Assembly: GCF_003918875.1 (NCBI RefSeq)
Contig: NW_025767479.1
Coordinates: forward strand, 1,736,001 to 1,800,000
Length of the DNA stretch: 64,000 nucleotides
Direction: 5' to 3'
Source of the DNA: Haliotis rubra
Taxonomy: Eukaryota
Part shown: positions 5,901 to 47,911 of the stretch, piece after piece
Layout of the letters: the number at the start of each line of letters is the position of its first letter
Position numbering within the stretch: position 1 is the first letter of the stretch
Notes under the pieces: model-generated
The model's database searches: none
What the model saw: only the letters and a program-made list of their open reading frames with translations
Told to the model about the DNA's origin: nothing
Translations under genes and position numbers: made by a program

Positions 5901-6546
5901 CAATCGTATGTAATCACACAAATACGAAAGGATATATGTTCTTTTATGTCTTCGCATGTTTTCTACAGATATGCCAACAGAGCGCAAGCCCATCACTCCG
6001 ACCACTCACTTATGAGAGTAACAGTTCGAATCCAATTCTAGAATTGTTAAATAACAAGAACAAGTTCTATTCATTTCAGTTGTAAAAACGCACTACAAAT
6101 GAATAGTTATATATGTCTGAATATTAATGAGTAATAGAATCGTAATCTTATCCGAATACATATACATCTATGAATGAATAATGTGTACAAAACTGACTGT
6201 TTTGGGAAATGGAAAGTCCGACTTACTGTTAGTTATGTTGTAGAGTGGGTGGGCGTCGATTTTTTCGGCAGTTATATTACTGAGTCTCCTTCTCTGAATG
6301 GAGCCATAACCAACTCTAAGCCTCTCAGGGTTGTCTTTCAGAGATCTGCAAAATACATCCCGTTCATTCAGTGAAAAGCTATTGATGGTACAAAAGGTAT
6401 TTATCCAGTGATATATTTGAAGATTTGAACACGAATTCGACCATCAAAGACGAATTCAACGCATCGGCTTTCTTTTGTATACAACATGCCAGTACTGCAT
6501 TTCCATTGGATATTCATTTCAATTTAGGGCGCGCGCGCGCGCGTGC

Positions 6547-6584
<38 letters not shown>

Positions 6585-24453: not shown

Positions 24454-27400
24454 TTAGGTTATCTGCGACATTATCCAGTCAACATATTGCGGGACGTTGG
24501 TATAAACTCCTGGAGACTGAGCTCGGCCACAACCATTTCCTCTGGATACCACACCGTATAAAACCCATTTGTCCCCATCAGGACACATCAGTGGACCTCC
24601 GGAATCTCCCTGAAACAAACCATTCAATGCATCAGAAGGAGCTTAATCAATATCACAACTTAGTTACCATTCATATTGTCTTTGATTCAGCGAAAAGTCA
24701 TTCTTATGTTAAACTATACGCCAACTATAATCATAAACGTTTCATGACTGCGTGTAGGCTTTCGTTGTGCAAGTTGTCGTGAAATATCGGGATAGAACAA
24801 AAGCAAAATTTCATCATTTGATACCTGTTCAATTTTTGAAAAAATTACCAAACGGTTTTCCCTTGAAGAAAGTCCAAAGATCCAAAGGTCAAGAAAGTCA
24901 GACAATCTTTCAAATTCTAGATGATGGGTATGAATTGACATTACTTATAGCAGACTGTCCAAGACACGATATCATTGTCCACGCACCGAACAGGCATCAA
25001 TTCCTCCAGTGCCAAAATACCCGGCACACAGCTGTCTGTCCGAGACAAGTACGAATGAATTGTCTGCATAGGATCTTTGACAGGAGTTCAGGGGGACCAA
25101 TGGCACAGCTGCCTTTTGAAGACTATCAGGGAAGCTATTACCGGTTTCTGAAAAGAACAAGGAAGAACTGACTCACTGGACGACACATGATGGCATTTAT
25201 TTGTAATGCATGTTAGCATTTCATAGAAAAATGTGTGTTTCCTGCTTGAGAGACGTTATGAGAAGCAGTTATTTGGTGAAGTCGTCATGCGAATAGTATT
25301 GGATTAATTTGCAATAGATATCGCCCATTTTCATCAGATGTTAATAAAAGAACAAAGTTCCATAAAAGTTATTCTTAGCTTCAGTCGGAAATATACCGGC
25401 TTCAATTTCAGAAGTGGAATGGTATTTATTGCTATATGATTCTATAATTCAGTTTTGTATATTTCGTAAGAATGTCCGTCATTGACCACAAAACAAAACT
25501 GCGATACAGCAGGCAGTTGGTGAAAAAGTAAGAGACTGTTTAGCTGAAATATAATCACTGAAATGAAACTTAAGATATAGATTATAAATATCTGCTTGAC
25601 CTATTTATGCCTTCGAACGACTTCACTGGTGATGACGTGATTCCTGAAATGTGGGGTTGAAAATGTGAATAAGACTCTCAAATGATTGAGCCGTGACTAT
25701 TTAATGGAATGCTTACCATTTAGAATTCCCCATCCCGTGATAATACATCTACGGTTGCTGTTATAAGATGTCCCAGCTTCGGGTAGACATATACTTCTTA
25801 GACCGGTGTTGACACTCAGAGGCAAGGGCTTCATTAAGAATTACAACAGCGATGTCATTGTCCCCTAGAGAATGGAAACATTAGCATAACGACTTGAGTG
25901 AATGCTGTTTTACGTTATCGGCAATGTTCCAGATATGTTTCGGCGATAAATTATGTTCATGTTTTGTGTAGGATTCTGCTGATGCATATTGGATAAGCAA
26001 TCGCCAACGTCCTCAAGTGCGATACCACTCAACCAACAACATCACCAAGACCGATCACCCGATCCAGTTCTTGTATAGCAGATAGCGGTGGGTACGTGGT
26101 TTAAACCAGACTAGGAAAACGACAAAACCCATTTTATTACTCCCGTCAAACAACCAGTATACCCACGTTTCCAGCTTCCTGGCTAGAATGCAACCTATAG
26201 GTGCTAATAGGTTACATTGTCATCTCATTCTATTCGCATCACAGCGTGATCAAAGTTTCTTGCCTTAAGTGATACTACTTGTGATACATAAACTCTAGTG
26301 TTTAGACGCTCTACCTTTCAGGCGTCAAGCTGTTGGTGATGGTTACCCATCCAACTTAAATCTGGGATCATTGTTGCTTAACTTCAGTGGAGTTATGCCT
26401 TGTGTGATCATGACGCTGTGCCATCTTTGGTAGAACAACAGGACCAGAGTGTAATATGTCTGGAAAGTCTGTTTGATTTTTGGTTGACGCCGCACTCAGC
26501 AATATTCCAGCTATTTGGAGCCGGTCTGTAATCAATCGAGTCAGTTCCATGTGTTTGTGAAAAGAGCCTTCTATCTCTTTGGGTCGTCTCATAACAGGTC
26601 TTATCTAATCGTGGCAATAAATCATAGCTTGCTGGTCATATTGTCAACAAATTGTCTTACCAAGATATAGATTTCCAACTAGTAGTATACTCAGTTGTGC
26701 ATTGCTAGTATTGTAATTTTCAGTGTAACTGTTTCGATAACATGCCACCATTATGAATTACCGTACCATTTCTATCATTATAATCTGGATGGATGATGAT
26801 CCGACTGGCCCGGACACGGACGAGGTTGGATCGTCTTGTAGATCCATATCCAACTGACAAGGAGTTTGGGCGTCTGACAACAGATCTGTGGTAACAAGCG
26901 TTCTCTTTACAGTGAAAATAGTTACGGTTGTATAAACTTTGATTACGTATAACAGCATTCGCATTTACGTTCACAGTTATATTAATAAACGTTGTGTTAT
27001 GCATGACGCAGTCACTTCAACAAATGAAAGAAACGAAACCGTTTCTATAATCGTAATTAGACATTTGTGCTAGAAGCAGATTTCCAATAAGTCCTTATTA
27101 TCAGCTTGTATTTATATACAAACATTAAAGATGATAATGACATGTGATTGCGAATGGTGATGAAACCCCCGCCCACCATTGACACCGAGAAACCTAAAGT
27201 GCGTATAGCTGTACCATAGACAGCCATGTATGGAACAGAAATAGAATTTAACGTTCGGTGTAATTCACAGTTGAGGGCGGTTGGAAGATGAATGGTGTAC
27301 GACAAACATATGTACACATAGGCGGATGCAGAGGGGGGTGCAGGGGTACGCACCCCCACCTTTTTGTTCTGAAAGTATGTTAACTGGCCATTGAAACTCG

Positions 27401-30363
27401 GTTGGCAATGAAGTGTGCACCCCCCCCCCCCCCCTTTCTCAATAGTGTGCACCTCCCTTTCTCAAAAAGCTGTATCCGCCCCTGGTGACTAAAGTGATAT
27501 GCTTCAACGCTACCTAACTTTACGCTCCAATTTTAGCATTGAATCACCCGTGTACATCCTTTCACTGATAAATTAATAAATTACAGAACGGCCATGGGTG
27601 ACGTCATCTGTCTAATGTTTAGTACTCGTGTCTGGAGTAACCTTCCGCTAAGTCAGTTCTTTCTTTTGAACTGGAAAGACGAGATGGTAATGCAATGCAA
27701 TAAGGTAAAAGAACGTTTCTTAAACACTCTAAAACCGTGAAATATCGACACAAACGTAAGTGAATTTGACTAAAGCTAAACCAAATCAGTAAATTGCTAT
27801 CANNNNNNNNNNNNNNNNNNNNNNNNNNNNNNNNNNNNNNNNNNNNNNNNNNNNNNNNNNNNNNNNNNNNNNNNNNNNNNNNNNNNNNNNNNNNNNNNNN
27901 NNNNNNNNNNNNNNNNNNNNNNNNNNNNNNNNNNNNNNNNNNNNNNNNNNNNNNNNNNNNNNNNNNNNNNNNNNNNNNNNNNNNNNNNNNNNNNNNNNNN
28001 NNNNNNNNNNNNNNNNNNNNNNNNNNNNNNNNNNNNNNNNNNNNNNNNNNNNNNNNNNNNNNNNNNNNNNNNNNNNNNNNNNNNNNNNNNNNNNNNNNNN
28101 NNNNNNNNNNNNNNNNNNNNNNNNNNNNNNNNNNNNNNNNNNNNNNNNNNNNNNNNNNNNNNNNNNNNNNNNNNNNNNNNNNNNNNNNNNNNNNNNNNNN
28201 NNNNNNNNNNNNNNNNNNNNNNNNNNNNNNNNNNNNNNNNNNNNNNNNNNNNNNNNNNNCATCGTATCTTATAGTCAATCCTGTGAAGTTAAATATTTTA
28301 ATTCGGTGGGTTTGCTTGGTATGTTTTTTCTTAATCCTAAGTAGAGGCATCACCTGACACAATGGGCGGCCGTGAGGATCACATCTTTCCTTATAATGGA
28401 GCCTCCACACATGCTGATAACGGCCTGTTCATCTACGACGTTCACTGTCCATGGGAACTCCCTCTCCTCCGCGTCGACACCACCGACAACACGTGGCATG
28501 GCGTATAGGGATGCTCTTCCTGTCACGCGGCTCTCCCCGCATGCCGGTCCTGAATAAAACCAGACATATGACCTAAAACAATGTCAACATAATGTAGCTA
28601 ACTTATCCCTTTGAATATTTATGCGTTGTTGAAGGACAATGCTTTTATGGTAAAGGTTTCCGCTTTTTGTGTATGTAGTGCTCATTGTTTCTAAAGGTAG
28701 TGCATGGAAAGTTGTACGTTTGATATAATAGTCATAAAATTAACTATTTATCACGTGCTAATATATTCTTTCAGTAGGGTGAATATGATTACAGTGATTT
28801 ACAGTCTGTTTGCAGTGAACACGTACCGATGAATTTCACTTTAAACTAAAAAGTAAATAAAATAAAGTAAAATTAAGATTGCGAATCCTCATAATTTTAC
28901 CTTGCCAATTGGACATTTAAATCTGAGAATTTTATTTCACTTAGGATAAAAGTTGTTTAACAAACGATCATAGTTTTAAATCGCTATTATTAGTTTGAAT
29001 TACCAGGGGATATGCAAATTAAATGAAACACCGAAAACAAGGAGGGTTGGTCTAAATTAACGCTCATCACGTACTGCACGTGCATTTGTTTCACTGTTCA
29101 ATCTACTGCACTTACCCCCTTGTAATACAAACCAATAATAGCGATTTGAATCTATGATCATTTGTTAAGAAACTTTTATCCTAAGTTAAATAAAATTCTG
29201 AGATTTAAATGTCCAATTGGCAAGGTAAAATTATGAGGATTCGCAATCTTAACTTCACTTTATTTGATTTACTTTTTAGTTTAAAGTGAAATTCATCGGT
29301 ACGTTTTCACTGCAAACAGACTAATACATTTTCTACACACATCAAATTGAGGACATGAAGTTTGAATAAACATTTTCATGATAATTATACGAATTGTAGT
29401 AGCGAGTGAGTATGGTTTTATGCCTCCTTTAGCAATATTCCAGCAATATCACGGCGGGGGACACCAGAAATAGCCTCACACAGTGTACCCATGTGGGGGA
29501 ATCGAACCCGGGTCTTTGGCATGACGAGCGAACGCTTTAACCACTAGGCTACCCAACCGCTCGGCAAAACAATTGTAACTATATGTGCGAACATTTGATT
29601 AGCGACATGCTATGGAACCTATTGTGTCTGTAACTAGAGAAATAGACACAAGAAAAAAAAACATGTTGGGGTAAATCATGAAGTTATACATATCTTATCC
29701 GTCAACACCTGAAACTAACGGTAATTGATGTAACTAATGTGGTTAATATGCTTAAATACATTACCAGTATTTCTCTGAATGTTGAAATCAGTACAGTTGT
29801 AGTATCCAAACAATACAGGGCAGAGTAGAGAGGAGGCGAAACAGTTCAGTAAAGAATTACAGAAAGCTGCTCTGTCTTGGGCGGCTGAAATATATGAAAG
29901 ACCATTAAACCACTTTTCACAGTGTCATTACTTCAGTCAAATGTGCTTCACACAATGGATGGGTATATTAACCCGGGTCTAGACATGATCCCGGGAATAG
30001 TGCATTGTCGTTTTGGCTTTTTTAAATAAGAGAAAAAAGACTCCATTGTTGTTAGGGCAAATCACATCCATTGTAATCACACGCACGCACGCACACAAAA
30101 ACGCTCCCGCGCACTCACATACACGCACAAACACGCACGCACACACAAACACGCAAACTCANNNNNNNNNNNNNNNNNNNNNNNNNNNNNNNNNNNNNNN
30201 NNNNNNNNNNNNNNNNNNNNNNNNNNNNNNNNNNNNNNNNNNNNNNNNNNNNNNNNNNNNNNNNNNNNNNNNNNNNNNNNNNNNNNNNNNNNNNNNNNNN
30301 NNNNNNTAAGAAGCTCACAATGGTAACACGTAAAAACACGCCTCTTCTTATACTCAAAGTCAT
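24454..30363 (-). CDS. SP3: secreted trypsin-like serine protease (S1A) with 4-Cys N-terminal module; 7 exons; +1 frameshift in Asp exon; first exon runs into a gap
   Basis: Exons: <=30307-30363 [19 protein letters not shown](gap); 29765-29884 Cys module; 28354-28549 PACG..AMPR|VVGG..TAAHC; 26767-26885; 25717-25864 DNDIAVV (148 bp vs 147 in SP1/SP2); 24987-25147 ..IDACS; 24454-24609 [21 protein letters not shown]. Confidence 0.88.
27317..27484. mobile_element. Short GC-rich non-autonomous DNA element (hAT-like CAGGGGCGGAT termini)
   Basis: cataggcggatgcag ... ctgtatccgcccctg imperfect TIRs; no TSD recognisable. Confidence 0.5.
28802..29323. mobile_element. MITE with about 205-bp TIRs (CAGT terminus, Tc1/mariner-like) in an SP3 intron
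   Basis: 28803-29010 is an inverted repeat of about 29116-29322; preceded by TA; no coding capacity. Confidence 0.85.
29403..29560 (-). mobile_element. SINE family A
   Basis: Reverse complement of the consensus. Confidence 0.9.
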
Positions 30364-31918: not shown

Positions 31919-34900
31919 ATGCTTCTGTCCTTTTGCATCTTAACAGGTAAGAAATACTTGATGATGGTGATTTGGAAACATATATAATGCGTATTTCGCT
32001 CACGGGACACAGTAGTAGTAAACTGCTTATTAAAGTGTCACATGCACAACATTTACAGTAAAATACAATTCACATATAACAATTTAAAGGAAGTGCGTCC
32101 AGCCATACATGGGCTTACGAGACACTATAAATACATTATAACTAGATTAATGGTATACACATAATGATATATAATATGGGAGATAGATATTTAGGCAGAT
32201 CGTAGATAAGACACGCTAATAACAACAACAGACTCCTCGATGAAACAACAAATTCTTATAGTAATCATAATTTTAGTACACATACATCAGACATAATTGC
32301 AATAGATAGAATATAAAAAGAAATAACTACAAAAAAGAAATTATGTCTTTAAAAAAGACACATGCTAAAGACATTTTTATAGTTGACACTTCCATTAAAT
32401 TTAATTCTTTAATTTACCGCTCAATTTTGACTCAATAGATATCTGTGTGTTCACATGCTTCCTTTGATCTTAATTGTACTTTGATTAAAAACACAACCGA
32501 TTAGCCTTTAAGACCTACCCTGTGTATGTTGACCCAGGTACAACATACAAAAGCCATGGAGTGAGAATCAGACAGGATCATCCTGTGAAGCAATGTTGAG
32601 GGGCCAACTATCTTGAATAATGCGATTCCTTCTTGTCATCAGTCTATTGTTCTGTTCATGTAATTGTTTTCCTGCACAAAGAATTGAAGGTATGTGAATG
32701 TTATAATGCATTAATTATCTTCCAATATGTAATTGCATGTGACAGAGCTACAGAATGAAAATATGCCACAATATTTATGTAATTTTCAGCATAAACTGCT
32801 TTGCCTTGTGTTGTTCCTTCCAACAAATATTTACATTGATAGTTAATTGTTCCGCTTGGGTATGATATAAAGTGTATTGCGAAAAATTAACGATGCACGT
32901 ATTCTACTTGCTAGAGGGTAATGAGTTTGATTGTACTTTCATGTAATTATCTTTTGGAAAATAGTACTTTTGTCAGTCTTTAATCATAATGTAGCGTAGG
33001 TTTTATGCCGATTGCTAAGTAAGTAAAGTTTGAAAAAAACACCTGCATCTTTAATTACTTTACTGTCTGTTAACTAAAATTACTAACAATAAATAAACAA
33101 CATCAGTTGCAATGGACATAATACTATTTAAGTGAAACGTTTATGTAGGGAAAATATTATGCCTAAACTATCTTTAGGATAAAGAAATTTTCTTTGCGTC
33201 AACAATCAAGGATCTAATTTATTAATTATTTTATGAAGAGTTGTGCAGGATCCTGACCAATCTCCGTCATGATGCGCATTCCCAACAACTGTCTGACATT
33301 CTTGACTGTGATAAAATGTGTAAGTACATTCATACCATCATCACAGTACTTTTATTCAAACTGGATGTTGTTTTAAAGTGATGAAAGATGATATTTCAAA
33401 ATTGACAATGCTTTAGACAGGAAATATTAATGAGAATTAGTTAACATACTAATTCAGTCATATTGTTATGTCATGTATATTTTATACATCTATCATATTT
33501 CTTCATAATTGTTTTTGAACATACACGAGTGTATGGTGATATATGAAAAATATTTTTGTACCTTTGTACCATTTCGTCGAAATATAACATCAATAGATCA
33601 GGTACCTTCTGGTCCGTTGTATTTCGAACTTACAACATGCAGTGCACTTCATTTAAACTATGTAATAAATTTAAACATATATTGTTTTCCAGTATCGTCA
33701 TGTGGTACAGTGCAGAACAGAAAGTGTCCTCAACCATGGATAGTTCTAGTTCGTGACAAGAAAAGGAATGCTGATATGTGTGTTGGAACGTTAATAGACG
33801 AGAGACATGTCATCACTGCTGCCCATTGCTTCAATCAAAGGTACGAACCTCACACAACATTTTAACTTCTGATCGGGGGTGGGGGTGGGGGGAGTGGGGG
33901 TGGACTTACATAATTGGCAGGCGGTCCTAACAACCCATCAAATGACATCTGCTGGGTAGAGGACGGCCGCTTGTCTTTAATGTATGGTCACCCTTTAATG
34001 TATGTTTTNNNNNNNNNNNNNNNNNNNNNNNNNNNNNNNNNNNNNNNNNNNNNNNNNNNNNNNNNNNNNNNNNNNNNNNNNNNNNNNNNNNNNNNNNNNN
34101 NNNNNNNNNNNNNNNNNNNNNNNNNNNNNNNNNNNNNNNNNNNNNNNNNNNNNNNNNNNNNNNNNNNNNNNNNNNNNNNNNNNNNNNNNNNNNNNNNNNN
34201 NNNNNNNNNNNNNNNNNNNNNNNNNNNNNNNAATGATGGCGAATTCAGTTTCTTATATTTTCCACGCACGCTGAAGTGTATTTGTTATTGGAGCGGTATA
34301 TGTATATGATGGAATGTGAATTTACGAGTTTTCATGCATTTTACCAGCCCTTCCAAATTCACAACTCCTTAAAGATTTTCAATGTCATTTTACATTTACT
34401 AAAAAGTAATTCTCCATGAGAAAATCAAGCTGCTTACTTAACAGGAGATAGAAAAACCTCAAAAATATAATTTCTGTCAAATCCGATTGGCAAAATACAG
34501 TCATGTTATAAGCAATGCATGTCTACATAATTATAAAACATTATGCTTGACGCTTCACTTTTTACTTTTCACCAGTAGAGAACAGATGGTTTCCACAATG
34601 TATATTTTATGGAATATGTTTATAAAACAAGATGCAGATTCCTGATTGTCGTTGTAAGGTACTACCTCCCTGATGATGTCCATGTCGGTATGGGTTCACA
34701 AGCGAATGGACAGCTTACCTACATAGACTTGAAATCCTTCACGCGTCACCCGAAATTCAGGAGCACTGGTTTACCAAGTAAGTTCTCACAGTACCTTTTC
34801 TATAATCACACTAAATCGTTCCTAAAAGCGGAGTCGATTACACAATTCTTTTATCTTAAAAGTATATGTTCACGAATCACTATCAAACAGTATAAATATC

Positions 34901-37900
34901 GGGTGTTACTCAAAGATACCCTCCTAGATATTTAATCCATTCATAAGCCTCTAGGATTTTTATGAGGAATCTATTACCACGGAAACCTACTTTTTGTTTG
35001 TTCAGAAAGGTGACGACATGTTTAACGGACGCCATGTCATAGAATGAAATATTTCTACAATGTGGGAATTAATCTAAAGATACCTAACTGACAAAAGTAA
35101 TACACAGTGAATGTACATTCTGTTAAACCGAAAATGAATAGTTAATGCATATATTTATGGAGTGCCAACAATTTACAGAACTGTGGTCAAAATCTGAACA
35201 TTTCATAACAATATTTTGACAATTCATTTTGACAAAGACTTAATTCTGTGTTGCTTTACACCAAGGTTCCATAAGGTATATATTTTGTTTATATCAATTA
35301 TGAAAATTTAATCTCATTCATATCTAAAATTCTCAAAACATAAAAGTGGAAAAATCAGTTGCCATAAGAAACTATCTTACGAAGGGAATTGACACATTAA
35401 AATTGTATTAGAATACTGCTGTCCTTGCATTATCCACTGATCTGTACATCTAAACTGAACGCCAAAATAGATGTTACACCTCTGAACATTAGAATATCCT
35501 TAAAGATACCTAACTGACAAAAGTAATACGCAGTGAATGTACATTCTGTTAAACCGAAAATGAATAGTTAATGCATGCATTTATGGAGTGCCAACAATTT
35601 ACAGAACTGTGGTCAAAATCTGAACATTTCATAACAATATTTTGACAATTCATTTTGACAAAGACTTAATTCTGTGTTGCTTTACACCAAGGTTCCATAA
35701 GGTATATATTTTGTTTATATCAATTATGAAAATTTAATCTCATTCATATCTAAAATTCTCAAAAACATATAAGTGGAAAAATCAGTTGCCATAAGAAACT
35801 ATCTTACGAAGGGAATTGACACATTAAAATTGTATTAGAATACTGCTGTCCTTGCATTATCCACTGATCTGTACATCTAAACTGAACGCCAAAATAAATG
35901 TTACACCTCTGAACATTAGAATATTCTAAAAATGTTAGATGGATAGAAGTCTTTGGTTTGGTATGTTTTAACAACCAATCATGTAACTCTATTGAGTCAA
36001 AACATCAGACTGAGGAATTCATTGATAATTAGGATATCGACATGTTTGTTTAGGTGGGGTGCATTGTCCTATTTTCAATCATGTAAAAATTCAAATCAAA
36101 AGTGTAAAAAACAGTTAAAAATGGGTCCAAATGATATTGTTTATGATGATAATTCATGCACATTCACAAAGAGTGATAAAGTTGGGTTTTGGATATGAAA
36201 GAATGGTTGTTTACCGTAAAAAGGGACCCAATGCTGAAATTGGATTTTTGTCTCTTTAAAACACATTCCAACCACTTGAGGTTTAATTTTTGGATCATCA
36301 TGACTTTCGACTGTTTTAGGAAGAGTCGTCAAACGAGAAAAGACTAATTTTTTCCCTTAGATACTGTAAAATTTTGCCTATTTCTGTCCTTGTATAAGGA
36401 AGCATAACGCCAAAACGTACCCATTGTAACTTCACCTTGCATGAAATGCACGTGAAAACTGTTGGAAACGGGTATATAAGGCCCCTAGATTTATCATTTC
36501 ACACCATACATTCACTACAATGCCGAGATTAACAGCAGAAGAGCGGGAGAGGGCCATTGGAATGCTGCAGACTGGGTCGACTGATCGGGAAGTGGCTGCT
36601 GCATTCGGGTGTCATCGCCTCACCATTCTAAGGCTGCGTCAGCGATTCCAGAATACTGGCACAACAAGAGACAGACCCAGAAGCGGGAGGCCACCAGTTA
36701 CAACCACTTCCCGATCAGTCGACCCAGTCTGCAGCATTCCAATGGCCCTCTCCCGCTCTTCTGCTGTTAATCTCGGCATTGTAGTGAATGTATGGTGTGA
36801 AATGATAAATCTAGGGGCCTTATATACCCGTTTCCAACAGTTTTCACGTGCATTTCATGCAAGGTGAAGTTACAATGGGTACGTTTTGGCGTTATGCTTC
36901 CTTATACAAGGACAGAAATAGGCAAAATGTTACAGTATCTAAGGGAAAAAATTAGTCTTTTCTCGTTTGACGACTCTTCCTAAAACAGTCGAAAGTCATG
37001 ATGATCCAAAAACTAAACCTCAATTGGTTGGAATGTGTTTTAAAGAGACAAAAATCCAATTTCAGCATTGGGTCCCTTTTTACGGTAAACAACCATTTTT
37101 TCATATCCAAAACCCAACTTTATCACTCTTTGTGAATGTGCATGAATTATCATCATAAACAATATCATTTGGACCCTTTTTTAACTGTTGTTTTGCTCTT
37201 TTGATTTGAATTTTTACATGATTGAAAATAGGACAATGCACCCCACCTAAACAAACATGTCGATATCCTAATTATCAATGAATTCCTCAGTCTGATGTTT
37301 TGACTCAATAGAGTTACATGATTGGTTGTTAAAACATACCAAACCAAAGTCTTCTATCCATATAACATTTTAGGATATTCTAATGTTGAGTGGTGTATTA
37401 TTTCTTTTGGTGTTCAGATTATAAAACAGTTGTACTGACTAATAAAGAGAAATAAGAATATACCAGGTGTTCGCAAAAAGCTAAACGTACCCGTCCCTGT
37501 CATGCGTTGATACAATCTACACAATAATGTTCAGATAATGTGATTCTGTTAGAACATGTAGACCTCACTGGCACGGTTGATCCATGAAGACATGTCAGTT
37601 ATATGCGCATTTCTAAAAGGGTTAATGTAGTGCCTGCGCCATGTTTCAGAAGACGACCTGGCAGTTCTTACCTTGCAGAGGAAGGTTCGGTTTGAGCCAT
37701 GTGTTCAACCAATATGTATTCCTGGAATAGCAAGCAATCCTGAAAAAGGGAGACCTGGTCACAGTCGTAGGATTTGGGCGTAAGAAGATTTTATTATACC
37801 CGATAGCATTGCAAGCATGAAAACGTTTCTGTCAGTTGTTCAATTCATCTCCAGTTACTATAGCCCGTGTTTTATACTGTATTGTCCTCTTTAATTGAAA

Positions 37901-38903
37901 TGTTTTAGCTTTGCTCACTAGTTTTATTCATATCTGTGATTATCTAGTATTTTTACTGTCCATCGTCGACAGGTTTTAATCTTCAAAACGTTTTTCTCTT
38001 TATATTGTATAAATTGTTTTCGTCACGATATGGCTGAGATATTGCCGATGTGACGTTAAATAATAACTCACTCACTCACTCATCTCCAGTTATTTTCCCG
38101 TTTAAACTGAAATATAAAAAAGGGAAATAACTAAAGAAAGTATAGTCTATGATAAGAATGGAATTTAAATGTTTCTTCTATTTTTCTATCTCTGTTTATG
38201 GGATACATTTATTTACTGGTGCTTCCAGCCTTGCTGTGTACTGTTTTGGCCTGAGTCAAACTTCAAGTGTATCCATAATTTTGATCGCATATTTAAATGA
38301 TATTTTAATATAGTATGACTTTTATCTAATGCTGTAAGGTTTTTGGAACAAAGGAAGAGCAAGATTGCAGTCAGCTGTGGTGCCAGTAATTAGTCGTAAG
38401 CAGTGTGGATGGATCTACCCAGAAATGATGTCACTGCAACATTCGATCTGCGCTGGATTGGGTTCCAGCATAATTTCATCAGTCTGTCACGTAAGGAATA
38501 CATTATGTCTCATTAATGATAAAATAAGAGGCACATGGGTACAATGTGTGAAGCCCATTTCTGGTGTCCCCCACCGTGATATTGCTGGAATATTGCTAAA
38601 AGCTGCGTAAAACTAAACTAAGTCAGTCTGTCATTCGTTAATAGCATATGTACAGGTTTTTTTTATATATCTGGGGTAATAATTATTAGATAAATTTTCA
38701 GATTATTTTTACATTATAGCGTACCATTAACATTAAACATAATTTTACAATTGCAGGACAACTCAGGAGCCCCGATGATCCTTCAGCGAGAAAATAAGTG
38801 GTTTCTGTACGGGATCAGCACGTCACACCGAAGCTGCACAGACGCTGTGTCTGTATACACTGATATTCCTCATTATGCATCCTGGATCAGCGGTGTTAAA
38901 TAA
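31919..38903 (+). CDS. SP4: atypical serine-protease homolog lacking the activation motif (CHDNSGAP); 7 exons; +1 frameshift in Asp exon
   Basis: Exons: 31919-31946 (tentative, MLLSFCILT); 33239-33319 (2-Cys module, tentative); 33693-33840 SCGTVQNRKCPQPW..TAAHC; 34659-34777; 37650-37779 DDLAVL..PICIP..VVGFG (extra base in A5G3 at 37743-37750); 38339-38490 LQSAVVP..ICAG..SVCH; 38757-38903 DNSGAPMIL..W.LYGI..SVY..WISGVK*. Confidence 0.82.
35075..35925. repeat. Direct tandem duplication of about 426 bp
   Basis: 35075-35500 repeated at 35501-35925 with few differences. Confidence 0.9.
35880..37420. mobile_element. Foldback Tc1 derivative: about 715-bp inverted arms with about 108-bp spacer, in an SP4 intron
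   Basis: 35882-36595 is the reverse complement of 36704-37417; centre encodes transposase N-terminus MPRLTAEERERAIGML..RPRSGRPPVTT (from 36520). Confidence 0.88.
37858..38079 (+). mobile_element. 3' end of a retroelement (probable LINE 3' UTR) with (ctca)n tail and 13-bp TSD
   Basis: TSD tcatctccagtta at 37845-37857 and 38080-38092; terminal stem-loop related to the SINE tails. Confidence 0.7.
38533..38625 (+). mobile_element. SINE family A, 5'-truncated
   Basis: cacatgggtacaatgtgtgaagccc..tail. Confidence 0.8.
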
Positions 38904-41695: not shown

Positions 41696-44600
41696 ATGTG
41701 GACGAAATCTGCACTTTTACTTCTTATGCTATGTGCCACATTCCTGAAAACCGACTGTGCCAGTAAGTACTTGACCATTTTTAAATTGTATAAATGGCAT
41801 ATGCTGTTGCTATATTGATTATTTTTTAATGACATATTACAGCTGCCTTGTGAAGAAAGCTTTATTTCATATTTCTTTGCATCGTCATAATGCTGTGTCA
41901 TCATCTCAAGCTTAGGTGCAGAAGAGTCATGTCATCTTTATTTCTGATCTATAACCACATAATATTTAATAAACTTCTTTGTTCGGTATAGCCAACATAC
42001 ATGTTGAAGGAAAAGCATTATATACACAGGAGTACAATGTTTCTGCTCGAAATAGTATTTTATAAATAGGTGGCAAAGACATGTATTGTCAATATTTGAC
42101 CACAATAAGGAAATAGATTAATTGAATATATTTCACTTATTAAGTGATAATAGGATAAATAGTATTGGTGCATGAATGAACCGCTATTGCTTATTCTTGA
42201 TGTAAGTGGTATCTCAAATGTGGATGAATGCATTCTGTTAAGAGGTACAGTAACAGCTACATTCAAATTTCATTGTTACATAAAAACAACAAACAATTTT
42301 GCTTTTGGTGTATCTATAATCAGTCGAAATATTCGTTTTATAGCATTGTAGTCAACGTGCACGTCGAAAGATTTCAGCTGTTATTAAATGTTTCAGGATT
42401 TTAAGAAGAACATAAATATATATTCAGTTGTAATAACACATTGCTTTGTTTTTCATATAGTTCTGCTTTTTCAATTGTGGATATTTTCATAAGCAGAATG
42501 AATACTCAAAACAATCAGCTTTGTCAGAGAAAACAACATATTTCGCAAAAAGAGAAGAATTATCACCTTAACGGTAATTACATTTTAATACTAAGAAAAA
42601 CATTACCTCAGTGAAACAGAGTATAACATATCGTCGTCATATACCTATCCTTTCCCGTGTGCATGATGCATGTGATTGAAAGTCATGCATGACACCATGT
42701 TCATTGAAGTATCTTCATTACAAATGCATGGATTGCAAACGACATCATGAATTCTGTCGGATATAAGAAACGCTTTCACAAGTAAAATTGCTTTTCTCAG
42801 ACACTTATACACAGTAAATGATCGCTGGCATGATATAGATATGGAGGTTTTTGTGATATCAATGTTCACCGATATGTGATTCCTGCACTGTATGGTTTTA
42901 TTCCATAATATTACAGACCTATGTGACTTCTGTGATGTTTTTAAGCAGTGCGTAAGGTTCCCTGCCTGCAAACACTACTGGGACATATGCAAATGTGAAG
43001 GTATTTGAAGCTTTAAGTGCTAATATTACGCAAACACAATGCTGTTTCATAGCGCATGTCATATTCATTAATAAAGCTGCTTAAATTCAAAGCCTACAAT
43101 ATGTTCGCATGATTCATTCCTAGCCTCATATTGTATTTGTTTCGTGTAATTTGGAACTATAAAAATCTTTGTTCAGTTGTAATAATGATAAAGAAGTATA
43201 TGAAATGGTTTACATTACATTTAACAACCTATTACAAAGCATATTTTAATTTTAAGAAATGAATGTAAAAAAATATTGAATGTATCATGAAGTTACTTTT
43301 TGAACATTTCTAAGCTATTCCCCCAGACATCCAATGTGGCGTTGCTGAATCTCCCCCGATACCTCGGATATCCACCTACATCGTTGGTGGAAAGGACGTC
43401 GGCGATTGCGAGTTGCCATGGACCGTTGCATTGTTCATCAAGGGTTCCCTGCGTTGTGGCGGCGCCATCTTCGACGACCGGCACATCATCAGTGCAGCTC
43501 ATTGCCTCATGTTAGTGCAGCTACCTTAACTCGAGTGAAAGGGTGAATGAGAGGATATGTATGTTTTCAGGACACAAGTATCATTTGGGAATCAAAACTA
43601 TGCCAACATGGATAATTAAAGACGTGAGCCAAAGCTTAAGTCAGCAAGCTCGCTCACTATTCGTGAAATATAATGTAACAAATTATGATGTTCTACTGTT
43701 TGGTTCACGAGATAACCTCAATGTTGACGTTTTTTGTGAAAATACCTGTAAGAAATTATGATATACGCATGAAATATCAGCTGTTTGAATCACAAAGCTA
43801 CCTCGATGTTACAAATACAATGGACTCTTGAACAGTATAAACTGTTTGAATCCCCAAGCTACCGCGATCTTACAAATATTCTTGAAATGAGCAGTAACGC
43901 ATGAAGTATAAACTGTTTGAATCACAAAGCTACCTCGATCTTACAAATATTCTTGAAATGAGCAGTAACGCATGAAGTATAAACTGTTTGAATCACAAAG
44001 CTACCTCGATCTTACAAATATTCTTGAAATGAGCAGTAACGCATGAAGTATAAACTGTTTGAATCACAAAGCTACCTCGATCTTACAAATATTCTTGAAA
44101 TGAGCAGTAACGCATGAAGTATAAACTGTTTGAATCACAAAGCTACCTCGATCTTACAAATATTCTTGAAATGAGCAGTAACGCATGAAGTATAAACTGT
44201 TTGAATCACAAAGCTACCTCGATCTTACAAATATTCTTGAAATGAGCAGTAACGCATGAAGTATACACAGTTTGAATCACAAAGCTACCTCGATCTTACA
44301 AATATTGTAATGCATGAAGTACAAACAGTGTGAATCACCAAGCCACCTCGATCTTACACCTATTCTTGAAATATGCTGTAACAAATTATGTTAAACGCAT
44401 GAAGTATAAACTGTTTTAATCACCAAACTACCTCGATGTTACAAACCTTCGTGACATATGCTGAAATGCATCATGCTATACACATTATGCTATATAAACT
44501 TTTTTTAATGGGCAGTCAGGAGAACATTTCCTATGATACTGACAGACACATTTATATCGCTTGGTTCAACCAGGCATGTAACAATAATGTAGCAGCAATT

Positions 44601-47600
44601 GAAACTTGATTTATTAAGAATATATTACTTCATATCGAATCATATTGTTGATATTCAAGAACGGATATATATACCGAGAGAGATCTGTTATTTGTTTCCA
44701 GGGTATACACTAGATATGAATTATACATATATAATATTTACATGGTTTATCTTCAAAAAGGGGATTAACGAATCCGAAAGATGTGGTTGTGGGGCTTGGA
44801 TCCAAAGACAGACGTCGAACACGGAATGCTACAGTGTCAGCCTTCAGTAGGCACCCACAGCACCATTCAGGTGAGACATATCCTTCAATATTTCTTCATC
44901 GATATTTTTTACTACAAGGTTTATGTCTGTCAACACTGCAGGGACGTTACTGAATCTCGACATAGGAACGACCAATGCATTGTTCTTTGTTATAAACTGG
45001 TGTGTCACAGTTCATACTTCTCGAGTGGTTGGTATCTTCTCTACCAAAATATTTCTTCTGCTGGTTTATGTTTGAGAATATTCCCCTTTCCAAGTTGATT
45101 AGAATTAGGACATGCTTGAAAATGTGCCTTCCTGGAAAAGACTAGCCAAACACAGACAGTAGTCTTTCTAATAGACCTCTGAATGTATCCAATGAGTGTT
45201 AACATTACAAGCATTGCTACACCAGAATGAAAATATACATCCGAAACAGAAGTCGTGACTTTTAAATTTCCGGAACATATATACTAGTAAATCTGGAATG
45301 TCGAAGTTAGTTGTGTGCTTTATAATTAGCTCAAAACTTCATTTTTCATGTGAGCAATAACTATGATCTTTTCCAGATGTCAATGATATTGCTATTCTAA
45401 GACTGGAAGAACCCATCAAGTTTGATAAATGTATACGGCCTATTTGCCTTCCACCACAAGACCATCAGTACAAAGCGAATCAGACGTGCATTGTTGCTGG
45501 ATGGGGACTTACATCAGGTACGTGTCTTTCCAAGCCCGTAAACCCTGACAATCTGGGATAGAATATGGTTTTCAGCAACCCATGCCTGTTGTAAGAGGCG
45601 ACTATCGGTATCAAGTGGCTAGGCTAATTGACCCCACATGTCATCGAAATCCCTATTTTTTAATTTTTAAACATTTATTTCCGCACTCAGGAGACCTCAG
45701 GCCTATAGAACAAATACAATGACAATTGATCAGTTAGTAGAATTTTTAAGAATTGTATTTTTTCTGTATGTGGTAGCGTAATAGATATACTTAGATAACC
45801 TTTCTAAATGTACTTTGGTAGAATTGGTTAAAAGGGATATGAATTTGTAAATGTCAGGATGTACATAGTAGTAGCTCTTAATATACTTATTTCTCAACAT
45901 ATGATAGGTTGGACATATACAAAGAAAATGGTACTCGTCTTCAATTACATTCAGATTACACAGTTTACATATCCTATGTTCTTTTGTTAAGCCTAAATAC
46001 CTAGCAGATTCTATTAGTAAGTCATGAGATGAACAGCGGAATTGCGCAAGGCATATTCTGAATTTTCTTACGTTTACCACAGACAGATACTGTTCTTTGT
46101 TGATAGATTGTTTAATCAATTTATAGTAAAACATTTGCTAGAAAGAGATACGTTTGCACTCCAGTTTTGAATGTACATATCTTTAAGTCGTTGTTTAACA
46201 GATAGCAGGAATAACGAGTGAGATTTAATATGCTGTTCATACAATGCATTACCAAATCCAACAGAAAATAACAATTATTTTACGTTTGTAACCCAATTCC
46301 TTTTCCCATTTGTATCATAAATAATCATCATATTATAACATTTTTGCTTGGAGCCATACTCAATAATTTTAACCAATATTTGATAACTTTCACATTTGCT
46401 TCAATATATAAGGGGAATCTACCACACTCGCCATACACTGCTGAATTACATGTATTAATTTTACCCCAAGATATTTCTTACAAGCATACAAATGAACTTT
46501 TTTTATGGCATCGGAGGCTTTGATTCCCCTGATCTACGCGCCATACAAAATGATGGGGCATATTTTAGCATCAAAGATCTTGAAGAAAGAGTTGTATGAG
46601 AAGTCTCCAAGTGTTTTTATATATTTCATAATCCCTATTAAGATCTTTTTGCCTTGCAATGAGGCTTGAATTGCATGCATGGACTATGAAAGGTGGTTTG
46701 TATGTCATCGAAATCCCTATTGCTTAGGGGGCGATGGGGTAGCCTAGTGGTTAAAGCGTTAGCTTGTCACGCCGAAGACCCGGGTTCGATTCCCCACATG
46801 GGTACAATGTTCGAAGCCCATTTCTGGTGTCCCATGCCGTGATATTGCTGGAATATTGCTAAAAGCGGCGTTAAGCAATACTCATTCACTCCTATTGCGT
46901 AGATCGATACTCATGATGTTGATGACTGGATTGTCTGAACCAGACTTGATTATAGACCGCCGTCATGCAGCTGGAAAATGGCTGACTGCGGCTTAAAACA
47001 AAAACAACAAACAACATTCAAGCTCGTGATAGGAAGTGCATCTGGGAAAGCTTGTACTTCAACCGCAGAATCTGGCTGTGTGTAAATGGACATATTCTGG
47101 TGTTGTATAAAGTATCTTTTATTCAATATAAATAACACTAACAATTAATTTATTGTTGTTACCAAGCGAGAACTGAGATTATGAATGTTCCAACATGCGT
47201 GTTCATTGACTTCTATTGCCACAGCCAGATGTTTTCTTCGTAACGGCTGAAACGTGTCACACGGTGTTTCAGAGACGAGGCTGTTCCAGCCGTTCAAGCT
47301 GCAGAAGGTTAAGGTGCCGCTGGTGGATCTGGAGACGTGCCAGACAGCATACAACGTGTTGGACACACAACTCTGCGCAGGATACTTTGTCAAAGGAGGA
47401 AAAGATTCCTGTAATGTAAGTTGTTTGAGGTTTAGGTTCTAGAAATGTATGAGGGAGGGTTTTGTCAGAAACAGGTTCAGGGAAGAAGTCAGGATCATTC
47501 TGATGCTTTCATTTGTGGTGGGTAGCCCAGTGGTAAAAGCGTTCGCTCCTCACGCTGAAGATCCGGGTTCGATTCCCCACATGTGTACAATGTGTGAAGC

Positions 47601-47911
47601 CCATTTCCGGTGTCTCTGCCGTGATATTACTGGAATATTGCTAAAAGTGGCGTAAAACCATACTCACTCATTTGTGCATGGCGATAGTCAAGAAAATGTT
47701 TCCAACCGATCCACAAAAGATACTTCTTTTTCAGACTGATTCCGGAGGTCCTCTGATTTGCGACTATAATGACCGATGGACTCTGATTGGAGTTGTGTCA
47801 AGTGGTGTTGGATGTGCTAGGCCCATGCTTCCTGGAAAATATACAAGGGTGTCAAAATATATCTCTTGGATTAACTATGTAACATCAGTGAGGAAACCAT
47901 ATCACTACTGA
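41696..47911 (+). CDS. SP5: secreted trypsin-like serine protease (S1A) with 6-Cys N-terminal module; 7 exons, intact; Y|IVGG and TDSGG
   Basis: Exons: 41696-41762 [22 protein letters not shown]; 42917-43000 Cys module; 43327-43510 IQCG..ISTY|IVGG..SAAHC; 44761-44870; 45377-45517 VNDIAIL..PICLP..GWG; 47273-47415 ..KDSCN; 47735-47911 [13 protein letters not shown]..; AATAAA at 47938-47943. Confidence 0.92.
43772..44445. repeat. 71-bp tandem repeat in an SP5 intron
   Basis: taaactgtttgaatcacaaagctacctcgatcttacaaatattc.. with period 71, about 9 copies. Confidence 0.93.
45658..46701 (-). mobile_element. 5'-truncated non-LTR retrotransposon (LINE ORF2 C-terminus, RTE-X-like) with 20-bp TSD
   Basis: ORF 45730-46134 [28 protein letters not shown] (CCHC zinc motif); AATAAA plus A-rich tail; TSD atgtcatcgaaatccctatt at 45638-45657 and 46702-46721. 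Confidence 0.85.
46728..46890 (+). mobile_element. SINE family A nested in a family B element, 12-bp TSD
   Basis: TSD cctattgc(t/g)tag at 46716-46727 and 46891-46902. Confidence 0.9.
47514..47671 (+). mobile_element. SINE family A
   Basis: Matches consensus; last intron of SP5. Confidence 0.88.

What the first reader, a model, noticed from the sequence alone, without database searches (positions are those of the whole stretch)
33693..38903. SP4: triad retained but the whole zymogen-activation switch co-deleted
Seen: CGTVQNRKCPQPW has no R|IVGG. The active-site segment reads SVCH-DNSGAP, i.e. D189S, G193D, D194N, G197A. GISTSHRSC..AVSVY puts bulky residues at 216 and 226. Cys136 (VTVVGFG) and Cys201 (PMIL) are both lost. 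His57, Asp102 and Ser195 remain. Known: activation needs the Ile16-Asp194 salt bridge and the Gly193 oxyanion hole. Inference: loss of both partners in two interacting pairs points to a selected, folded, permanently zymogen-like pseudo-enzyme (decoy or cofactor) or an allosterically activated enzyme, rather than random decay.
Basis: partly seen in the sequence, partly recalled or inferred. Interest (0 to 1): 0.7.

Follow-up and report, generated by a model that had tools for sequence, protein, structure and literature searches.

The report
Abalone protease-like protein lacking its on-switch
This abalone gene encodes a secreted trypsin-like protein that keeps the three cutting residues but has lost the parts that normally switch such enzymes on; it is intact and conserved in four abalone species, so it is a working gene, most likely a non-cutting binder like the recently described human PRSS23.

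Summary
(1) As assembled, the gene is broken. Exon 5 has one A too many at 37743-37747, and the public Haliotis rubra protein (XP_046550583.1, 200 aa) is truncated there. Independent contigs of three DNA runs all lack that base, so it is an assembly error. (2) The gene starts further upstream. Neither carries IVGG, and the N gap lies inside intron 3. (3) The IVGG segment is substituted, not deleted: positions 16-19 read S-C-G-T with the spacing kept.

Orthologs in H. asinina, H. rufescens and H. cracherodii share the exon structure, all 15 cysteines, His57/Asp102/Ser195 and Asn194, and none has an R|IVGG site. dN/dS is 0.24-0.28 (p 1e-9 or lower). This is a selected gene, not a decaying copy.

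Residues 214-216 also differ from the family consensus, and Gly193 is Asp in two species. A non-catalytic or weakly catalytic "switch-less" pseudoprotease is the likeliest reading, but neither activity nor expression could be tested. The concept is already known from PRSS23 (J Biol Chem 2026), so this is a new member, probably of independent origin. The scan has not reported it before on other DNA.

The parts
32620..32689 (+). Exon 1: start codon and signal peptide (MRFLLVISLLFCSCNCFPAQRIE), phase-1 donor GAAG|GTATGT
   Evidence: ORF. Identical start in the H. rubra, H. asinina and H. rufescens proteins. 70 nt in all three species.
33239..33319 (+). Exon 2: 27 residues (ELCRILTN..DILDCDKM), predicted helical, two conserved Cys. 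It replaces the CG...R activation linker of the paralogs.
   Evidence: 81 nt in all three species. dN/dS 0.11-0.41. Helices predicted at low confidence.
33693..33840 (+). Exon 3: positions 14-60 of the protease domain. S16-C17-G18-T19 (33698-33709) stands in place of IVGG. Also holds Cys25, the PW motif, Cys42, His57 (33824-33826) and Cys58.
   Evidence: (Pfam Trypsin 33.2 bits). X1 contig confirms it with two synonymous differences.
34009..34231 (.). Assembly gap (N) inside intron 3; no coding sequence expected in it
   Evidence: Flanking exons join in frame and have the same lengths as in the orthologs. Not filled.
34659..34777 (+). Exon 4 (RYYLPDDVHVGMG...STGLP)
   Evidence: 119 nt in all three species.
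35453..37419 (.). Intron-4 insertion absent from organisms B and C: the second copy of a ~430-nt tandem duplication plus a 1.44-kb palindrome carrying a transposase-like HTH ORF
   Evidence: X4 record 18 and X9 record 24 join 35450/35452 directly to 37420; repeats.
37650..37779 (+). Exon 5: Asp102 (37655-37657), Cys117, Cys122, VTVVGFG. The assembly has one A too many in the run 37743-37747, which shifts the frame.
   Evidence: 'Left out 1' at 37743 in all contigs of X1, X4 and X9. 129 nt in orthologs. The truncated public protein P0152 diverges from the reads-frame model after residue 173.
38339..38490 (+). Exon 6: Cys168, Cys182, Ser189, Val190, Cys191, His192
   Evidence: X1 contig is identical over the exon (record 7).
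38757..38903 (+). Exon 7: Asp193-Asn194-Ser195-Gly196-Ala197-Pro198 (38757-38774), Thr214-Ser215-His216 (38820-38828), Cys220, Ser226, stop TAA
   Evidence: (Pfam 21.6 bits). X1 contig is identical (record 8).

Best explanation
SP4 is an intact, selectively maintained 7-exon gene of Haliotis rubra. The frameshift in the assembly is a homopolymer error. The gene encodes a 281-residue secreted, single-chain protein with the chymotrypsin (S1A) fold.

It sits in a tandem cluster of canonical R|IVGG proteases and probably arose there by duplication. It shares the rare extra cysteines at positions 25 and 117 with its neighbours SP5 and SP6.

On a long stem branch before the abalone radiation it lost every part of the Ile16-Asp194 activation switch:
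- the basic P1 residue and Ile16-Val17 (now S/P-C);
- Gly19 (now T/R);
- Asp194 (now Asn).
The activation linker was replaced by a short helical, Cys-containing N-terminal piece. The substrate-binding strand 214-216 (Ser-Trp-Gly) became Thr/Ile-Ser-His/Pro. In the rubra/asinina branch the oxyanion-hole Gly193 became Asp.

Inference: the protein cannot adopt the classical active conformation and works by binding rather than cutting, for example as a cofactor, decoy or regulator of extracellular proteases or their inhibitors. That is the way PRSS23 is reported to work.

Shown here: gene integrity, purifying selection, predicted fold, and the substitutions. Inferred: lack of catalysis and the binding role.
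For: Gene integrity:
- Contigs of three DNA runs drop the extra A.
- Exon lengths are identical in H. asinina and H. rufescens.

Orthologs:
- XP_067651567.1, XP_046333465.1 and XP_071086286.1 have full ORFs with the same features.

Selection:
- dN/dS is 0.24-0.28 by NG86 (0.24-0.37 across four methods) with p 1e-9 or lower, and all 15 Cys are conserved.
- The three exon differences listed between X1 and the assembly are all synonymous.

Fold:
- pLDDT is 86-98 in most 10-residue blocks of the protease core.
- Foldseek TM (by target) is mostly 0.75-0.85 to thrombin, enteropeptidase and chymotrypsin.

Switch loss:
-.
- Asp194 is kept in 94 of 100 homologous domains, Gly193 in 90, Ser214 in 92 and Gly216 in 80.
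- Only 1 of 84 triad-intact homologs lacks an acid at 194.

History:
- Stem branch of 3.5 changes per site against 0-0.17 on the branches inside the SP4 clade.

Precedent:
- PRSS23 keeps the triad, lacks the Ile16-Asp194 switch, and shows no probe labelling or substrate turnover (PMC13194640).
Against: - No activity, binding or expression data exist. The one possible RNA run laid (X17) had no contig on any exon.
- His57, Asp102 and Ser195 are kept in all four species, and Gly193 is kept in H. rufescens and H. cracherodii, so residual or unconventional catalysis is not excluded.
- A conserved Lys49 followed by Met/Ile-Leu at the exon 2/3 junction could be a non-canonical cleavage site; the MAFFT alignment reads it that way.
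- dN/dS shows constraint on the protein, not on any particular function.
Confidence: 0.58

Rival explanations
1. SP4 is a real protease that reaches an active state without the classical switch. It could be constitutively active as a single chain, be cleaved after Lys49 to expose Met/Ile-Leu, or be switched on by a cofactor or substrate. Known cases of this kind are single-chain tPA, complement factor B/C2 and factor D.
For: - The triad is kept in four species.
- Gly193 is kept in two species.
- DCDK followed by a hydrophobic pair is conserved and aligned to R|IV by MAFFT.
- The gene is under purifying selection.
Against: - All characterised exceptions still use an acidic residue at 194 (PMC13194640). 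Here it is Asn in all four species.
- Gly193 is Asp in two species.
- Ser214, Trp215 and Gly216, which hold the substrate backbone, are all replaced.
- Gapless alignments put Ser, not Lys, at P1.
Confidence: 0.27
2. SP4 uses its retained triad for chemistry other than peptide-bond hydrolysis, for example acyl transfer or peptide L-to-D isomerisation.
For: - The triad is retained while the protease-specific parts changed.
- The H. cracherodii ortholog carries the automatic name 'venom peptide isomerase heavy chain-like'. That is a similarity-derived label, not evidence.
Against: There is no specific similarity to any such enzyme. Retention of the triad is not beyond average site conservation.
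Confidence: 0.05
3. SP4 is a decaying pseudogene: a frameshift in exon 5 on top of the lost activation site.
For: The assembly has a frameshift and the public H. rubra protein is truncated at 200 aa. No RNA contigs were seen.
Against: - The extra base is absent from contigs of three runs, including the same species.
- The ORF is intact in four species.
- dN/dS is 0.24-0.28.
- Exon structure and all Cys are conserved.
Confidence: 0.03

Closest known systems
Vertebrate PRSS23 (and its paralog PRSS35), secreted S1 'pseudoprotease' (PMC13194640, J Biol Chem 2026)
   Same: S1A fold. The His-Asp-Ser triad is conserved across orthologs. There is no Ile/Val at the mature N-terminus and a non-acidic residue at position 194. 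The switch substitutions are conserved across species, and the protein is secreted.
   Different: - PRSS23 has Ala194 and a Gln N-terminus after removal of a large prodomain. SP4 has Asn194 and an uncleaved, Cys-containing N-terminal piece with S-C-G-T at 16-19.
- SP4 lies in a Haliotis tandem cluster of canonical proteases and has no detected relatives outside Haliotis, so it probably has an independent origin. Orthology to PRSS23 was not tested.
- PRSS23's lack of activity is measured; SP4's is inferred.
Alpha subunit of mouse 7S NGF (PDB 1SGF chain A), a kallikrein homolog (properties from my own knowledge of Bax et al. 1997, not read here)
   Same: As I recall, it keeps the triad but is an inactive 'locked zymogen' with an altered, uncleavable activation segment, and it serves as a binding subunit. 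1sgf_A is among the PDB sequence matches to exon 3.
   Different: It is a recent mammalian kallikrein duplicate, whereas SP4 is a mollusc lineage. The specific substitutions were not compared here.
Complement factor B / C2, single-chain tPA
   Same: S1A domains that work without insertion of a new Ile16 N-terminus. C2 and factor B are among the top PDB sequence matches to exon 3.
   Different: They keep an acidic residue at 194 that pairs with an internal Lys/Arg (PMC13194640), and they are active enzymes. SP4 has Asn194.
Arthropod serine protease homologs (clip-SPHs) and the neighbouring gene SP7 of this window
   Same: Non-catalytic S1A members embedded in families of active proteases, thought to act as cofactors or regulators.
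   Different: Classical SPHs have lost a triad residue (usually Ser195) and are still cleaved at the activation site. SP4 is the reverse: triad kept, switch lost. No CLIP domain is detected.
Canonical paralogs SP5 and SP6 in the same window, and gastropod S1 proteases (Lymnaea CAL1548409.1, Aplysia XP_012937004.1, Nucella KAL8589329.1)
   Same: They share the fold and a Cys four residues before the PW tryptophan. SP5 and SP6 also share the second extra Cys before Cys122.
   Different: They keep R|IVGG (Y|IVGG in SP5). The GDSGGP motif and Cys201 were seen only in SP5 and SP6. The gastropod proteases are about 30% identical to SP4 over the domain.

Membership tests
Peptidase S1A / Pfam PF00089 Trypsin (chymotrypsin fold) | Significant match to the family profile | tested here: met
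   Exon 3 scores 33.2 bits and exon 7 scores 21.6 bits, both above the 20.6 cut-off. The orthologs carry PF00089.
Peptidase S1A / Pfam PF00089 Trypsin (chymotrypsin fold) | Two-barrel chymotrypsin fold | tested here: met
   AlphaFold model of the H. asinina ortholog: pLDDT 81.6, with most core blocks at 86-98. Foldseek E about 1e-20 and TM by target mostly 0.75-0.85 to thrombin, enteropeptidase and chymotrypsin.
Peptidase S1A / Pfam PF00089 Trypsin (chymotrypsin fold) | His57, Asp102, Ser195 present | tested here: met
   present in all four species.
Peptidase S1A / Pfam PF00089 Trypsin (chymotrypsin fold) | Cysteines of the core disulfides 42-58, 168-182, 191-220 | tested here: met
   All six are present and conserved. 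The bonds themselves were not tested.
Canonical zymogen-activated S1A protease | Cleavable basic P1 followed by Ile/Val16-Val-Gly-Gly | tested here: not met
   Positions 15-19 read S-S-C-G-T (S-P-C-G-R in H. asinina). The five paralogs I read keep the site.
Canonical zymogen-activated S1A protease | Asp194 as partner of the new N-terminus | tested here: not met
   Asn in all four species; Asp in 94 of 100 homologous domains.
Canonical zymogen-activated S1A protease | Gly193 of the oxyanion hole | tested here: inconclusive
   Asp in H. rubra and H. asinina; Gly in H. rufescens and H. cracherodii.
Classical serine protease homolog (triad-dead SPH) | Replacement of at least one triad residue | tested here: not met
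   The triad is intact.
CLIP-domain serine protease (the automatic name of the H. rufescens ortholog) | N-terminal CLIP domain | tested here: not met
   The precomputed Pfam list holds only PF00089, PF13365 and PF03761. The N-terminal piece is 27 residues with two Cys.
Triad-retaining, switch-less S1 pseudoprotease (PRSS23 type) | Triad kept; no Ile/Val16 N-terminus; no acid at 194; substitutions conserved among orthologs | tested here: met
   definition from PMC13194640.
Triad-retaining, switch-less S1 pseudoprotease (PRSS23 type) | No serine-hydrolase activity (probe labelling, substrates) | not testable with these tools
   Needs recombinant protein.
Triad-retaining, switch-less S1 pseudoprotease (PRSS23 type) | Common descent with PRSS23/PRSS35 | not tested
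   No PRSS23 sequence was compared. The position in a Haliotis cluster of canonical proteases and the lack of detected relatives outside Haliotis suggest an independent origin.

The most novel reading that the evidence does not exclude
SP4 is catalytically competent and stabilises its active site in a way not described for S1A enzymes. The uncleaved N-terminal segment, pinned by the new Cys17 and the short Cys-containing helix of exon 2, together with Asn194, would replace the Ile16-Asp194 salt bridge. Alternatively, the retained triad serves non-hydrolytic chemistry.
Probability: 0.12. Interest if true: 0.75.

Novelty: new member of a known kind. Interest (0 to 1): 0.4.

Why it matters
This would be a second, probably independent case of an S1 protein that keeps its catalytic triad while losing every part of the Ile16-Asp194 switch, and that stays under purifying selection. 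That supports the idea, put forward for PRSS23 in 2026, that this is a recurrent route to pseudoproteases that triad-based annotation misses.

It also gives a compact 281-residue, invertebrate-specific model for testing whether such proteins are truly inert.

On the practical side, the public H. rubra protein XP_046550583.1 is truncated by a one-base assembly error, and the orthologs carry misleading automatic names (CLIP-domain protease, venom peptide isomerase, plasma kallikrein).

Tried and rejected
- **Pseudogene by frameshift.** This was my first reading. I rejected it when all three DNA runs lacked the extra A and the orthologs showed 129 nt.
- **Hidden IVGG exon.** A regex scan of all + frames upstream and in introns 1-3 in three species found only a G-rich intronic run and an irrelevant hit upstream of the start codon.
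- **Upstream exon similarity.** tblastx of the SP4 upstream region against the upstream regions of the paralogs gave no hits.
- **Expression.** Both run searches listed no run on record as RNA from the abalone organisms. The possible RNA run X17 covered only repeats. No reads calls were left, so expression remains open.
- **Relatives outside Haliotis.** The exhaustive search with exon 3 found one 90% match (H. asinina), and the remaining single-domain matches were at most about 67% identical over partial stretches. Two word searches found only Haliotis proteins.
- **Sister group.** The tree did not resolve which paralog is sister to SP4 (polytomy). The paralog rows in it were rough concatenations of tblastn pieces, and SP7 was left out.
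- **AlphaFold confidence dips.** The dips at residues 181-190 and 221-230 (the autolysis and 180s loops) cannot tell a zymogen-like state from ordinary loop variability.
- **Literature.** One paper search for Haliotis serine protease homologs returned nothing relevant. A search on 7S NGF alpha returned only a reference entry.
Full report
**Source and context**

The window is G000:C2589:1736001-1800000 of a 1.378-Gb, 2855-contig assembly. The public protein XP_046550583.1 of Haliotis rubra (P0152) is exactly the product that the window's assembled sequence predicts. The genome is therefore blacklip abalone.

A tblastn of the SP4 pieces against the window shows a cluster of trypsin-like genes:
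- SP1 at about 2980-7344, minus strand
- SP2 at about 17062-20605, minus strand
- SP3 at about 24472-28454, minus strand
- SP4, plus strand
- SP5 at 43407-47881, plus strand
- SP6 at 55102-57187, plus strand

**Gene model and the gap**

Splice sites and phases were read directly and then fixed by orthologous proteins.

| Exon | Window coordinates |
|---|---|
| 1 | 32620-32689 |
| 2 | 33239-33319 |
| 3 | 33693-33840 |
| 4 | 34659-34777 |
| 5 | 37650-37779 |
| 6 | 38339-38490 |
| 7 | 38757-38903 |

- The N gap (34009-34231) lies in intron 3.
- Exon 3 ends ..CFNQ plus two bases. Exon 4 supplies the third base and continues RYYLPDDVHVGMG, which is the expected continuation after His57.
- Both flanking exons have the same lengths (148 and 119 nt) as in H. 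asinina and H. rufescens.

**The frameshift**

In the assembly, the frame that carries Asp102 (..DDLAVLTL..NPEK) and the frame that carries GDLVTVVGFG differ by one base around an A5G3 run. Read as assembled, the product ends early, and that is the 200-aa public protein.

Contigs of three DNA runs laid on the stretch all leave out one base at 37743, at full depth. The runs are X1 (organism A, which holds 83% of the sampled words and so is probably the same species), X4 (organism B) and X9 (organism C). The exon is 129 nt in the two orthologous loci and 130 nt in the window.

The break is an assembly error. With four A's the CDS is 846 nt and encodes 281 residues, open from start to stop.

**Checking the observation**

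The quoted motifs are present (details in the observation check). By alignment to 100 homologous domains, SP4 compares with the family as follows.

| Position | SP4 | Most common residue among 100 homologs |
|---|---|---|
| 57 | His | His, 93 |
| 102 | Asp | Asp, 95 |
| 195 | Ser | Ser, 87 |
| 196 | Gly | Gly, 99 |
| 198 | Pro | Pro, 84 |
| 189 | Ser | Asp, 62 |
| 193 | Asp or Gly | Gly, 90 |
| 194 | Asn | Asp, 94 |
| 197 | Ala or Val | Gly, 82 |
| 214 | Thr or Ile | Ser, 92 |
| 215 | Ser | aromatic |
| 216 | His or Pro | Gly, 80 |
| 226 | Ser | Gly, 51 |

The Cys136/Cys201 pair is missing, but it is also missing in 72 of 100 homologs.

All five other paralogs whose N-terminal exon I read keep an activation site:
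- PR|VVGG (SP1 and SP3)
- VK|IVGG (SP2)
- TY|IVGG (SP5)
- SR|IVGG (SP6)

**Substituted, not deleted**

Three independent gapless alignments place SP4's S-C-G-T on positions 16-19:
- the Pfam Trypsin profile (query residue 7 on profile position 6);
- earthworm fibrinolytic enzyme 1ym0;
- the nearest gastropod relatives, whose IVGGTQARRC.YPW lines up with SCGTVQNRKCPQPW, sharing G18, Q21, R23, C25, P28 and W29.

What SP4 lacks relative to its neighbours is the roughly 20-residue CG...R linker at the 5' end of that exon. Its place is taken by exon 2.

MAFFT offers an alternative in which Lys49|(Met/Ile)-Leu stands for R|IV and S-S/P-C is a three-residue insertion. This leaves open a non-canonical cleavage site. 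I carry it as part of the rival explanation.

**Orthologs and selection**

The exhaustive search with exon 3 found one close relative, a 281-aa H. asinina protein at 90% identity over the exon. Word searches added H. rufescens (288 aa), and cluster look-up added H. cracherodii. No relative turned up in any other genus.

Synteny is kept: in both orthologous loci a trypsin-like gene lies upstream on the opposite strand, and another gene lies downstream on the same strand (a trypsin-domain gene in H. rufescens; no Pfam hit on record in H. asinina).

All four species share:
- the seven-exon layout (exon boundaries mapped in H. rubra, H. asinina and H. rufescens; H. cracherodii known from its protein only);
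- 15 cysteines;
- the triad;
- Asn194;
- S/P-C-G-T/R at positions 16-19.

Position 193 is Gly in the rufescens/cracherodii pair and Asp in the rubra/asinina pair, and the tree groups the species the same way. Gly193Asp is therefore probably a later, lineage-specific step.

Selection measures:
- Pairwise dN/dS is 0.24-0.28 by Nei-Gojobori and 0.30-0.37 by the other three methods.
- The excess of synonymous change is significant at p = 1e-9 to 6e-17.
- It also holds for exon 2 alone in the two comparisons with H. rufescens (p = 0.006 and 1e-4).
- The three exon differences listed between run X1 and the assembly are all synonymous.

Retention of the triad cannot be given special weight. 184 of 288 alignment columns are invariant, so three particular sites would all be invariant about a quarter of the time.

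**Structure**

With a 102-row alignment, AlphaFold2 gives the H. asinina protein a mean pLDDT of 81.6.
- Most 10-residue blocks of the protease core score 86-98.
- Blocks 181-190 (autolysis loop) and 221-230 (180s loop) score 65-68.
- The N-terminal piece scores below about 66.

Foldseek's best matches are thrombin, enteropeptidase, chymotrypsin and prostasin. I do not read the loop dips as evidence of a zymogen-like state, because no control was folded.

**History**

In a maximum-likelihood tree, the four SP4 proteins form a fully supported clade. Its stem is 3.5 changes per site, while the branches inside the clade are 0-0.17. Its sister group is unresolved.

SP4 shares a Cys four residues before the PW tryptophan and a second Cys five residues before Cys122 with SP5 and SP6. 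Only 1 of 100 other homologs has both. This hints at a local tandem origin.

**Mechanism**

- Shown: a secreted-type, disulfide-rich S1A protein under purifying selection that lacks the P1 basic residue, Ile16, Val17, Gly19 and Asp194, and has a remodelled 214-216 strand.
- Established knowledge (summarised in PMC13194640): the Ile16-Asp194 switch shifts the equilibrium toward the active state by about 10^6-10^7. The known exceptions (single-chain tPA, C2a) still use an acidic residue at 194.
- Inference: SP4 cannot form the classical active site and acts by binding.

The same paper shows that PRSS23 keeps the triad, lacks the switch, is secreted, and has no detectable activity. The kind is therefore already known, and SP4 is a new, probably independent member.

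**Verdict**

The 'not decay' interpretation is supported. Function remains inferred.

My probabilities:
- about 0.58 for a non-catalytic binder;
- 0.27 for an unconventional active protease;
- 0.05 for other chemistry;
- 0.03 for a pseudogene.

Noticed in passing
window 37743-37747: One-base homopolymer error in the assembly (A5 where reads and orthologs have A4). It truncates the public H. rubra protein XP_046550583.1 to 200 aa with a 27-residue out-of-frame tail.
   Followed up: yes
window 35075-37419: Intron 4 holds a ~430-nt tandem duplication (35075-35504 and 35501-35931) followed by a 1.44-kb near-perfect palindrome. The palindrome has arms 35929-36109 / 37191-37371 and 36106-36598 / 36701-37193, and its inner arms carry a transposase-like helix-turn-helix ORF from 36521. 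Contigs of organisms B and C join 35450/35452 directly to 37420. It is either a private fold-back transposon insertion or a long-read assembly artefact.
   Followed up: partly
window 37845-38081 and 38532-38620: Very high-copy short repeats: summed contig depth of 10^5-10^7, tRNA-like GGTTCGATTCC box in the loose ends, CTCA-type tails. The first is absent from the orthologous intron in organisms B and C. These repeats, not the exons, explain the small shares of 'RNA?' runs in the run searches.
   Followed up: partly
window 33867-33905: G-run tract (GGGGGTGGGGGTGGGGGG...) about 30 nt downstream of the exon-3 donor. Contigs break there, and the assembly gap follows about 100 nt further on at 34009. 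It may be what broke the assembly there.
   Followed up: no
window 2980-57187: Six tandem trypsin-like genes: SP1-3 on the minus strand and SP4-6 on the plus strand, with SP3 and SP4 head to head. SP1-3 form a tight clade. SP5 has Tyr rather than Arg/Lys before IVGG.
   Followed up: partly
P0156 (H. cracherodii XP_071086295.1): An annotated isoform X2 starts at the Met that ends exon 2 and so lacks the signal peptide and the helical piece. It could be an alternative promoter or an annotation artefact.
   Followed up: no
P0003:195-440: This is the only one of 84 triad-intact homologous domains that lacks an acid at 194. It reads Lys193-Val194-Ser195 while keeping IVGG, so it may be another partly switch-less S1 domain. 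The organism was not looked up.
   Followed up: no
window 33775, 33811, 37660: Run X1 (the same organism label as the best holder) differs from the assembly at three exon positions. All are synonymous (Asp51, Val63, Leu116). X4 and X9 agree with the assembly at these sites.
   Followed up: yes
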